Virus record (IMG/VR): IMGVR_UViG_3300046703_000335 | Coordinates: 62,001-126,000 of that record | Reading direction: 5' to 3' (one strand) | DNA: 64,000 bases | Shown: positions 1,776 to 1,897 of the stretch, in pieces | How the letters are laid out: each line of letters begins with the position of its first letter | Position numbering within the stretch: position 1 is the stretch's first letter | Program-made: the position numbers and the translations under genes | Notes under the pieces: generated by a model | Told to the model about the DNA's origin: nothing | Databases searched by the model: none | The model's input: only the letters and a program-made list of their open reading frames with translations

Positions 1776-1897
1776 GTTGAAACTACAGAAGTCGTGCATG
1801 CTAGTCTGAGGGATTTGAACCCCCTACCTATTGATTAGAAGTCAATTGCTCTACCAAATGAGCTAATGTAAGCCTTCACTGTAATTGTAGTTTCAAC
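1776..1897 (-). ncRNA. Y-RNA-like element C (YrlA-type architecture): tRNA-Arg(UCU)-like D/anticodon/T arms with the acceptor stem replaced by the conserved stem
   Basis: GTTGAAACTACA-ATTAC-AGTGAAGGCT-TACATT-AGCTC ATTTGGTA GAGC A ATTGA CTTCTAA TCAAT AGGTA GGGGG TTCAAAT CCCTC-AGACT-AGCATGCACGA-CTTC-TGTAGTTTCAAC; no acceptor stem, no CCA. Confidence 0.75.

What the first reader, a model, noticed from the sequence alone, without database searches (positions are those of the whole stretch)
1776..1897. Acceptor-less tRNA-Arg(UCU) mimic with an intact anticodon loop
The D arm, 7-nt anticodon loop CTTCTAA and TTC T-loop are canonical, but positions 1-7 and 66-72 do not pair and there is no CCA, as in YrlA architecture. 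An intact anticodon loop could decoy anticodon nucleases or tRNA-modifying enzymes. Both tRNA-like inserts correspond to AT-rich codons (AGA, AUA).
Basis: partly seen in the sequence, partly recalled or inferred. Interest (0 to 1): 0.65.

Follow-up and report, generated by a model that had tools for sequence, protein, structure and literature searches.

The report
Phage Y-RNA-like tRNA mimic
The element is a real, conserved small-RNA gene of a huge peat-soil phage: a tRNA body without an acceptor stem mounted on a long conserved stem. It is one of three such units just upstream of a hidden Ro60-type RNA-binding protein gene, so it is most likely a phage Y RNA and not a broken tRNA.

Summary
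Window 1776-1897 (- strand) has canonical D, anticodon (CUUCUAA) and T arms, no acceptor stem and no CCA, enclosed by a perfect 12-bp terminal stem.

It is not a decayed tRNA. It is the first of three paralogous units (1897-1776, 1717-1599, 1541-1399) that share one scaffold: a terminal stem whose sequence differs in every copy, a conserved internal loop, a covarying 3-bp helix, and the fixed motifs UACAUU and GCA-N6-ACUU. The heads differ: an acceptor-less tRNA, plain hairpins, and a full tRNA-Ile(UAU) with CCA.

I found 46 such units in 13 loci of related huge phages, nearly all beside one 520-aa gene. That protein, 1.3 kb downstream here, escapes Pfam TROVE but folds as Ro60/Rsr (Z 16-21).

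Five orthologues of this unit are all acceptor-less, with 15 compensated pairs. Their anticodons differ (UCU, UUU, GUU, GAU).

Best reading (about 0.6): a divergent phage Y-RNA-like RNA with a protein-binding stem and a tRNA-shaped head, built like Deinococcus Yrn1 rather than YrlA. It fails Rfam YrlA and lacks the CGAA motif. Binding and expression are untested. This is a new variant of a known kind.

The parts
1776..1897 (-). Unit 1 (the finding): scaffolded acceptor-less tRNA-like RNA, 122 nt
1886..1897 (-). P1, 5' arm of the terminal 12-bp stem
   Evidence: I7, 100% complementary. Covaries in orthologues.
1776..1787 (-). P1, 3' arm
1880..1885 (-). Conserved internal loop, 5' side (AUUACA)
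1788..1793 (-). Conserved internal loop, 3' side (GACUUC; ACU invariant in 46 units)
1865..1879 (-). Inner helices P2a (GUG) and P2b (GCU), then the fixed joiner UACAUU
   Evidence: (P2b covaries: GCU/AGC, GCA/UGC, GCG/CGC, ACU/AGU)
1794..1802 (-). 3' strands of P2b (AGC) and P2a (CAC) with the small loop between them
1848..1863 (-). D arm
1830..1846 (-). Anticodon arm: 5-bp stem, 7-nt loop, UCU at 1839-1837
   Evidence: All five stem pairs have compensatory changes in orthologues.
1808..1824 (-). T arm
1599..1717 (-). Unit 2: same scaffold, non-tRNA hairpin head
1399..1541 (-). Unit 3: same scaffold carrying a complete tRNA-Ile(UAU) with encoded CCA (tRNA at 1508-1433)
1929..1958 (-). Promoter-like site upstream of unit 1 (consensus match only)
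1200..1244 (-). Intrinsic terminator that closes the RNA array
1..471 (-). First 157 codons of the 520-aa Ro60/Rsr-fold protein (the rest lies just outside the window, L001:409-1971)
530..796 (-). Conserved ~84-aa ORF that always precedes the Ro60-like gene

Best explanation
Window 1776-1897 (- strand) encodes a non-coding RNA of about 120 nt, the first of a three-gene array of phage Y-RNA-like RNAs. The array is probably transcribed from a promoter near 1930-1960 and ends at the terminator at 1244-1200. Each RNA has two modules. Module 1 is a conserved scaffold: the 5' and 3' ends pair in a 12-bp stem, followed by a 6x6 internal loop of fixed sequence, two short helices and a fixed UACAUU joiner. 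Module 2 is an exchangeable head. In this unit the head is a tRNA body (D, anticodon and T arms, with the bases needed for the L-shape) whose acceptor arm is replaced by the scaffold, so it can be neither aminoacylated nor cut by RNase P. Inferred mechanism: the scaffold is the docking site for the phage's own Ro60-type ring protein, encoded 1.3 kb downstream. The tRNA-shaped head recruits or occupies a host factor that recognises tRNA shape, as Y RNAs tether Ro60 to PNPase in Deinococcus and in Thermus phage phiLo. Shown here: the structure, its conservation and covariation, the family of units, the Ro60 fold of the neighbouring protein, and the synteny. Inferred: transcription, binding to the Ro60-like protein, and the partner of the head.
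For: Structure and family. Three paralogous units share scaffold motifs, but each has a different, self-complementary terminal stem.
- 46 units were found in 13 distinct loci, with 45 different 9-nt arms and a covarying P2b helix.
- An unbiased test took 29 motif pairs without asking for a stem. 23 had a flanking stem of 7-15 bp (median 12), against control medians of 3-4 and a maximum of 7.

Conservation. Five orthologues, from phages whose Ro60-like proteins are 72-86% identical to this one, are all acceptor-less and all first in the array. 15 of 32 pairs are compensated.

Protein. The AF2 model has pLDDT 84. Its 13 best Foldseek matches are all Ro60/Rsr/TROVE (E about 1e-10). VIA-align gives Z 16.4-20.7 over 416-449 residues spanning both the ring and the vWA domain, and the MIDAS motif DxSGS is invariant.

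Linkage.
- The own 210-kb record holds exactly three strict units, all beside this gene.
- In whole records, 4 of 5, 4 of 4 and 2 of 2 motif hits lie within 1.5 kb of the gene.
- All 15 loci fetched through the protein carry tRNA or tRNA-like genes within 4 kb of the gene, mostly just upstream of it.

Precedent.
- Y RNAs with tRNA-like domains lie next to Ro60 in bacteria and phages (PMC4201824).
- Phage phiLo has two Y-like RNAs upstream of its Ro60, and these bind Ro60 and host PNPase (PMC12135203).
- Permuted heads on this scaffold in relatives are the only sub-threshold Rfam YrlA matches (31, 26 and 25 bits).
Against: - There is no RNA evidence: no RNA-seq run holds the locus.
- No binding test is possible with these tools.
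- The scaffold lacks the GNCGAA(N)G / CGAA motif that marks known Ro60-binding modules. Rfam YrlA gives no hit in the window even at E<=10.
- Pfam TROVE does not detect the protein, so homology rests on a predicted fold.
- The linkage is not absolute. One unit in G002 lies 220 kb from the gene, beside a tRNA.
- A 97%-complete 192-kb phage (G005) has one unit inside an ordinary tRNA array and no detectable Ro60-like or TROVE gene.
- In a relative at 35% protein identity (L014), the gene sits beside ordinary tRNAs without the scaffold.
- Some heads are complete tRNAs with CCA, which also fits a role in tRNA expression.
Confidence: 0.6

Rival explanations
1. tRNA expression and processing cassette. 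The scaffold is a leader-trailer duplex (for example an RNase III or RNase E/P entry site, or a stabiliser) used by these phages to make tRNAs. Unit 1 is a tRNA-derived passenger with no role tied to Ro60.
For: About a quarter of the heads are full tRNAs with an acceptor stem and encoded CCA followed by an A-rich trailer, placed so that RNase P could release them. Units away from the Ro60-like gene sit in tRNA arrays. The Ro60-like gene of a distant relative lies beside plain tRNAs.
Against: Ordinary tRNAs in the same arrays have no scaffold. Roughly three quarters of the heads cannot give a tRNA: they are acceptor-less, have an acceptor closed by a loop, or are plain hairpins. The acceptor-less design is kept with compensated stems in five lineages. 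The loop sequences are conserved far beyond what a nuclease entry site needs. Orthologous 'full tRNA' heads switch anticodon (UAU, UAC, AUC, GCA, and one with a malformed loop), which is odd for decoders.
Confidence: 0.15
2. Free-standing decoy or sponge. The tRNA-shaped head with an open anticodon loop soaks up host anticodon nucleases or tRNA-modifying enzymes. The scaffold only protects the RNA ends, and Ro60 plays no part.
For: The anticodon arm is kept as a 5-bp stem with a 7-nt loop, while its sequence is the fastest-changing part: stem difference 0.60 against 0.24 overall in unit 1, loop difference 0.46 against 0.21 in unit 3. That pattern could reflect an arms race. The head cannot be charged, so it is not a decoder.
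Against: Fast change fits relaxed constraint equally well, and only five sequences were compared. Two orthologues have G33 instead of the universal U33, which weakens close mimicry of a real anticodon loop. No nuclease or defence gene context was found. This reading does not explain the sequence-conserved internal loop or the linkage to the Ro60-like gene.
Confidence: 0.15
3. Decayed tRNA-Arg pseudogene.
For: Strong similarity to tRNA over positions 7-64. The nearest database matches are phage tRNA genes.
Against: Orthologues in five lineages are all acceptor-less, keep every stem through compensatory changes, and keep the flanking scaffold. The sequence is identical in independent samples.
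Confidence: 0.02
4. A DNA-level element (miniature inverted-repeat transposon, attachment site), or a CRISPR-like array in which the 40-nt direct repeats are the functional parts.
For: Inverted terminal arms are present. Two 40-nt direct repeats between the units end in GGAUUGAAAC, which from memory recalls type I-C repeats. Rfam CRISPR-DR9 gives weak hits (15.6 and 14.4 bits, E 3-7).
Against: The arms differ in every copy yet stay complementary, which fits RNA pairing and not transposon ends. The direct repeat occurs only twice in 210 kb and is absent from close relatives. The CRISPR hits are far below threshold. The spacing of 182 nt is not spacer-like.
Confidence: 0.02

Closest known systems
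Deinococcus radiodurans Yrn1 (Y RNA bound by Rsr; Chen et al. 2014, PMC4201824)
   Same: The RNA ends pair in a long stem. The other module has D-like and T arms, with a 5-bp 'anticodon arm' between them and no acceptor stem. It is encoded next to a Ro60 orthologue.
   Different: Here the anticodon loop has the canonical 7 nt and a variable region is present. The stem lacks the metazoan-like Ro-binding helix and carries its own conserved loop motifs. The RNA is phage-encoded and sits in an array.
YrlA (Rfam RF02553), bacterial and phage Y-RNA-like tRNA mimics
   Same: A tRNA-like domain on a terminal stem, located beside Ro60. In relatives, heads on the same scaffold have the YrlA order (T arm, closed acceptor, D arm) and give the only sub-threshold YrlA hits.
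   Different: The unit in the window has the opposite topology and an anticodon arm. It gives no Rfam YrlA hit and has no GNCGAA(N)G motif.
Thermus phage phiLo Ro60 with Yrl1/Yrl2 (PMC12135203; PDB 9KOP, 9L5Y)
   Same: A phage Ro60 gene with Y-like RNA genes just upstream. The protein is a structural match (Z 16-19).
   Different: The phiLo RNAs were picked by their CGAA bulge and are not described as tRNA-shaped. Here there are 3-7 units per array, with a different conserved motif set and tRNA-type heads. The protein carries a conserved basic beta-hairpin at residues 110-139 and is invisible to Pfam TROVE.
Mycobacterium smegmatis YrlA (cut by RNase P, receives CCA)
   Same: It is a precedent for a Y RNA whose head behaves as a tRNA substrate. 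Unit 3 (full tRNA-Ile with CCA on the same scaffold) could be processed likewise.
   Different: Unit 1 has no acceptor stem, so it should not be an RNase P or CCA-adding substrate.
Ordinary phage tRNA genes and tRNA pseudogenes
   Same: D, anticodon and T arms score as tRNA (51 bits).
   Different: No acceptor stem, no CCA, conserved flanking scaffold, anticodon not conserved among orthologues.

Membership tests
tRNA (canonical gene) | 7-bp acceptor stem formed by positions 1-7 and 66-72 | tested here: not met
   The Rfam alignment is local, covering positions 7-64 only. Only 3 of 7 flanking positions can pair. RNAalifold on five orthologues predicts no acceptor helix.
tRNA (canonical gene) | Discriminator plus CCA end (encoded or addable at a free 3' end) | tested here: not met
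   No CCA follows the T arm. The 3' side runs into the scaffold helices.
tRNA (canonical gene) | D arm, 5-bp anticodon stem with 7-nt loop, T arm with UUC | tested here: met
   alignment. The stems covary in orthologues.
tRNA (canonical gene) | Recognised by a tRNA gene finder | tested here: not met
   ARAGORN calls only tRNA-Ile at 1433-1508.
YrlA (Rfam RF02553) | Score at or above the family's gathering threshold (69 bits) | tested here: not met
   No YrlA hit in window 1100-2100 even at E<=10. The best hits in relatives are 31, 26 and 25 bits.
YrlA (Rfam RF02553) | Order T arm, closed acceptor-like stem, D arm; no anticodon arm | tested here: not met
   Unit 1 is D arm, anticodon arm, T arm. 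The YrlA order is found on the same scaffold in L004, L006, L008, L009, L015, L016 and L056.
YrlA / Y RNA in general | GNCGAA(N)G (CGAA) motif in the 5' strand of the Ro60-binding module | tested here: not met
   The 5' strand reads AUUACAGUGAAGGCUUACAUU. The family consensus has no CGAA.
YrlA / Y RNA in general | 5' and 3' ends pair in a stem interrupted by an internal loop | tested here: met
YrlA / Y RNA in general | Encoded next to a Ro60 orthologue | tested here: met
   A Ro60-fold protein gene starts 1.3 kb downstream on the same strand. The synteny is seen in related phages. Exceptions.
YrlA / Y RNA in general | Physically bound by Ro60 | not testable with these tools
   No protein-RNA docking or experiment was available.
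Ro60 / Rsr (TROVE + vWA) for the neighbouring 520-aa protein | Pfam TROVE (PF05731) domain by sequence | tested here: not met
   No TROVE hit at E<=1. The genome-wide search was empty while the controls Deinococcus and Bacteroides were detected.
Ro60 / Rsr (TROVE + vWA) for the neighbouring 520-aa protein | Helical-repeat ring followed by a vWA domain with a MIDAS motif | tested here: met
   AF2 pLDDT 84. Full-length matches to Ro60/Rsr: Foldseek E about 1e-10 and Z up to 20.7 over 449 residues. D341, S343, G344 and S345 are invariant.
CRISPR repeat / RNA anti-CRISPR (for the 40-nt direct repeats between units) | Match to a known repeat family, or to a host array | tested here: inconclusive
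   Only Rfam CRISPR-DR9 at 15.6 and 14.4 bits against a threshold of 45. There are two copies only. No host array was searched.

The most novel reading that the evidence does not exclude
Huge phages carry a modular RNA display system. One conserved scaffold, read by a cryptic Ro60-type ring protein, presents interchangeable tRNA-shaped heads: acceptor-less, circularly permuted with a closed acceptor, or complete with CCA. The anticodon arms of these heads are the fastest-evolving part. The heads would act as baits for host tRNA-directed defence enzymes (anticodon nucleases, tRNA modifiers), and the Ro60 ring would couple capture to degradation, repair or sequestration. Anticodon turnover would then record an arms race.
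Probability: 0.15. Interest if true: 0.85.

Novelty: new variant of a known kind. Interest (0 to 1): 0.62.

Why it matters
- Y RNAs and Ro60 are known from animals, bacteria and a few phages, but what the tRNA-like module does is still open.
- This family offers a natural experiment: one conserved docking scaffold carrying at least four kinds of head, in arrays of 3-7, across many huge phages from peat, sediment and other habitats.
- It reveals a large Ro60-fold protein family (hundreds of members, all 'hypothetical') that sequence models miss.
- It shows both known tRNA-mimic topologies (Yrn1-type and YrlA-type) side by side on the same scaffold. That argues that heads are swapped rather than evolved once.
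- It gives a defined, sequence-conserved candidate protein-binding loop that can be mutated.
- For annotation, truncated tRNA hits (model positions 7-64) and oddly 'remoulded' tRNAs next to this gene should not be counted as decoders or pseudogenes.

Tried and rejected
- Similarity search of the region against phage genomes found only generic tRNA matches of 60 nt.
- PHROGs and Pfam on neighbouring ORFs were uninformative for the RNA.
- The first collection scan used a pattern with one N too many. It gave 3 matches without stems and served as an accidental control.
- The corrected pattern gave 42 loci. 37 of them had no flanking stem. The 10 of these that I read were coding sequence, the 114-nt matches coming from one conserved gene. 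Only 5 loci held real units, 4 of them on contigs already found through the protein. The viral collection therefore adds little breadth.
- The search for RNA-seq runs found DNA holders only. Laid contigs confirmed the sequence but say nothing about expression.
- The idea that a hammerhead core (CUGAUGA) upstream of unit 1 makes a ribozyme was dropped, because no stem II or stem III can be drawn.
- The -35/-10-like site inside the direct repeat (1740-1713) would start transcription inside P1 of unit 2, so I do not rely on it.
- The CRISPR-repeat reading of the direct repeats is kept only as a note.
- The Atlas look-ups for the 285-aa and 88-aa neighbours gave nothing usable.
- The fold of the 84-aa protein gave only insignificant ubiquitin-like matches.

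Full report
1. THE OBSERVATION

On the - strand, window 1897-1776 reads as follows: a 12-nt arm, 21 nt of linker, a tRNA core, 20 nt of linker, then the reverse complement of the first arm.

- Rfam's tRNA model matches 1807-1866 (-) at 51.3 bits, but only over model positions 7-64 of 71. The neighbouring tRNA-Ile(UAU) at 1436-1508 matches end to end at 62.8 bits.
- ARAGORN reports only the tRNA-Ile.
The would-be acceptor strands pair at 3 of 7 positions, and no CCA follows.
- The unit folds into terminal stem, internal loop, two short helices and a three-arm junction at -35.8 kcal/mol (z = -3.8).
- Contigs from independent peat metagenomes carry 1721-1894 with no difference, so the sequence is real.

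2. IT IS ONE OF THREE PARALOGOUS UNITS

Direct repeats D1, D4, D5, D7 and D9 and the alignment show that 1897-1776, 1717-1599 and 1541-1399 are built alike.

- Each has a terminal stem of 12 bp whose sequence differs in every unit but is always self-complementary.
- Next comes a 5' loop AUUAYA opposite RACUUN, then a short helix.
- Then a 3-bp helix GCU/AGC (ACU/AGU in unit 2, a compensated change), and a fixed UACAUU just before the head.
- On the 3' side the motif is GCA-N6-ACUU.
- The heads differ. Unit 1 has the acceptor-less tRNA. Unit 2 has two plain hairpins. Unit 3 has a complete tRNA-Ile(UAU) with a 7-bp acceptor stem, discriminator and encoded CCA.
- All three units fold to the same outline.
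- A promoter-like site lies at 1958-1929 and a strong terminator at 1244-1200, both on the - strand. One transcript of about 700 nt, or three shorter ones, is plausible. This is inferred.

3. THE NEIGHBOURING PROTEIN HAS THE Ro60 FOLD

The window begins inside an ORF on the - strand. Read in full (L001:409-1971, 520 aa), it has a helical N-terminal two thirds and a C-terminal vWA domain with DRSGSM.

- Pfam finds only a sub-threshold VWA_2 match and no TROVE domain. A TROVE search of the whole 210-kb record is empty, while the control genomes are detected.
- The family is large: 480 proteins at E<=0.001 among the candidates scored, on contigs up to 470 kb, nearly all 'hypothetical'.
- An AlphaFold model from 30 members has pLDDT 84 and pTM 0.79.
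- Its 13 best Foldseek matches in the PDB are all Ro60, Rsr or TROVE structures, including the Ro60 of Thermus phage phiLo (E about 1e-10, TM 0.51-0.62 over the whole length).
- VIA-align gives Z 16.4-20.7 over 416-449 residues for these. It gives at most 15 over about 155 residues for proteins that share only the vWA domain.
- The MIDAS residues are invariant.
- A conserved, lysine-rich beta-hairpin at residues 110-139 projects from the ring in the model. I take it, by inference only, as a possible RNA-gripping arm.

4. THE SCAFFOLD IS A FAMILY TIED TO THAT GENE

- Fifteen loci fetched from viral contigs through the protein all carry tRNA or tRNA-like genes within 4 kb of the gene, mostly just upstream of it. 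These include further truncated Rfam hits covering model positions 7-64 or 8-63.
- A motif search finds 46 units in 13 distinct loci. There are 45 different 9-nt arms. P2b appears as GCU/AGC (16), GCA/UGC (8), GCG/CGC (7) and ACU/AGU (3). TACA and ACU are invariant.
- That search required a stem, so I repeated it without one. Of 29 motif pairs, 23 have a flanking stem of 7-15 bp (median 12). With a reversed or displaced flank the median is 3-4 and the maximum 7.
- The own 210-kb record has exactly three strict units, all here, and no other tRNA gene.
- In three other whole records, 4 of 5, 4 of 4 and 2 of 2 hits to the 5' half-motif lie within 1.5 kb of the Ro60-like gene. The reversed control pattern gave none.
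- The linkage is strong but not absolute. One unit in G002 lies 220 kb away, next to a tRNA. One unit lies in an ordinary tRNA array of a nearly complete 192-kb phage that has no detectable Ro60-like or TROVE gene. A relative at 35% protein identity has plain tRNAs and no scaffold beside the gene.

5. THE HEADS

Sorting the 46 heads by motif order and by eye gives four kinds in roughly equal numbers:
- full tRNAs with an acceptor stem and CCA;
- acceptor-less D-anticodon-T bodies like unit 1, some with an extra hairpin;
- circularly permuted bodies in which the T arm comes first, the acceptor stem is closed by a loop, and the D arm (often with an anticodon arm) follows;
- non-tRNA hairpins.

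The permuted heads are the only sequences that give even sub-threshold matches to Rfam YrlA (31, 26 and 25 bits against a threshold of 69). Chen et al. 2014 describe exactly these two topologies. YrlA has a closed acceptor-like stem between the T and D arms. Deinococcus Yrn1 has an anticodon-like arm between them, with the RNA ends running into the Ro60-binding stem. Unit 1 is therefore of the Yrn1 type, not the YrlA type.

I fetched close relatives through the protein: L065 (86% identical), L067, L068 and L069 (77%) and L002 (72%). All keep the array, and all keep an acceptor-less unit in first position with nearly the same terminal stem.

- RNAalifold on the five copies predicts 32 pairs, 15 of them with compensatory double changes. 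This includes all five pairs of the anticodon stem, and no acceptor helix appears. The unit is therefore not a decaying pseudogene.
- The anticodon is not kept. The loops read CUUCUAA, CGUUUAA (twice), CUGUUAA and CUGAUAA. Two of them have G at position 33.
- The orthologues of unit 3 keep the acceptor, D, T and anticodon stems, but their loops give UAU, UAC, AUC, GCA and one malformed loop.
- The anticodon stem (unit 1: 0.60 pairwise difference against 0.24 overall) and the anticodon loop (unit 3: 0.46 against 0.21, with only 5 of 141 windows as variable) are the fastest-changing parts.
- With five sequences, this is a hint only. It fits either relaxed constraint on a loop that is not used for decoding, or diversifying selection.

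7. HOW IT MOST LIKELY WORKS

I read unit 1 as a phage Y-RNA-like RNA, by analogy with three precedents: Rsr-Yrn1-PNPase in Deinococcus, rsr-yrlA loci in bacteria and phages, and phiLo Ro60 with two upstream Y-like RNAs that bind it and host PNPase.

- The scaffold would dock on the phage's Ro60-type ring.
- The tRNA-shaped head would engage a factor that recognises tRNA shape.
- Shown: structure, covariation, family, fold of the protein, synteny.
- Inferred: transcription, binding, the partner, and the consequence.
- The scaffold has none of the sequence marks of known Ro60-binding modules (no CGAA). If it binds, it does so through its own conserved loop.
- My confidence in this reading is about 0.6. 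Confidence that it is a selected, structured RNA and not a pseudogene is above 0.9.

8. RIVALS

- A tRNA-processing cassette (0.15) is favoured by the full tRNAs with CCA and by the units in tRNA arrays. It does not explain heads that can never yield a tRNA.
It is compatible with the fast-changing anticodon arm, but untested, and G33 in two orthologues weakens it.
- A pseudogene, and DNA-level or CRISPR-like readings, are each about 0.02.

9. NOVELTY

Y RNAs with tRNA-like domains beside Ro60, including in phages, are known. New here are:
- a Ro60-fold family that sequence models miss;
- a distinct conserved scaffold;
- its modular use with both known mimic topologies, and with real-looking tRNAs, in arrays of 3-7;
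- the turnover of anticodons.

Full-text searches for Ro60, Y RNA, YrlA and TROVE together with phage terms found no description of this arrangement. The library is incomplete, so prior description cannot be excluded. I rate it a new variant of a known kind, with interest 0.62.

- Read laying was given 901 letters.
- Table 11 was used throughout.

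Noticed in passing
window 1546-1585 and 1728-1767: Two 40-nt direct repeats (90% identical) lie between the units. On the - strand they contain GUCGCUGAAAAGCG(U/C)GGAUUGAAAC, which from memory resembles a type I-C CRISPR repeat with a shortened hairpin. Rfam CRISPR-DR9 gives only 15.6 and 14.4 bits. There are two copies only in 210 kb, and the repeat is absent from close relatives.
   Followed up: partly
L004, L015, L056, L070 and others, 10-25 nt before P1; window 1735-1741 and 1553-1559: A short motif, CUUUGAAA (UUGAAAC in the window), precedes most scaffold units in many phages. Its position makes it unlikely to be a -35 box. It may be a processing or recognition signal.
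   Followed up: no
window 1250-1400 (- strand): The stretch between unit 3 and the terminator is partly conserved in four relatives. RNAalifold predicts a weak long-range stem plus small hairpins. It may be a fourth, scaffold-less RNA element or a leader.
   Followed up: partly
window 530-796 (- strand): A conserved ~84-aa ORF always sits directly upstream of the Ro60-like gene (12 loci). The AF2 model has pLDDT 84 and a beta-grasp-like fold with only insignificant ubiquitin-like matches. The C-terminus is conserved and ends in FG.
   Followed up: partly
L017:6391-7065 and L017:11958-12371 (genome C1:52391-53065 and 57958-58371): ThiF/E1-like and JAB-domain genes lie 3-9 kb downstream of the Ro60-like gene. 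Together with the small beta-grasp-like protein, this hints at a phage ubiquitin-like conjugation set. Untested.
   Followed up: no
L017:5521-5921 (genome C1:51521-51921, - strand): The phage encodes a tmRNA with the tag AKDYAVKFALAFADNISLGVASSIAA, about 10 kb from the array.
   Followed up: no
window 1399-1541 and orthologues L065:1934-2076, L068:1945-2088, L067:1839-1978, L002:2922-3062: The 'complete tRNA' head of unit 3 keeps its acceptor, D and T arms among close relatives but changes anticodon (UAU, UAC, AUC, GCA, and one malformed loop). It may not be an ordinary decoder.
   Followed up: yes
window 14552-18400 (- strand): The DNA polymerase gene (1282 aa) has an internal LAGLIDADG/endonuclease-like segment around residues 700-870, probably an intein or an inserted homing endonuclease.
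   Followed up: no
window 23038-24243 (- strand): A 401-aa transposase-family ORF matches phrog_506 at E 4e-111, inside the replication gene block. From its size I guess it is TnpB-like.
   Followed up: no
L006:2109-2294: In one relative a HEARO RNA (Rfam, 90 bits) lies about 400 nt upstream of the first unit of the scaffold array.
   Followed up: no
L070 (G002:C1:179500-180100, - strand): A solitary permuted, YrlA-like scaffold unit lies 220 kb from the Ro60-like gene. It follows directly after a long-arm tRNA whose anticodon loop contains UCAAA.
   Followed up: partly
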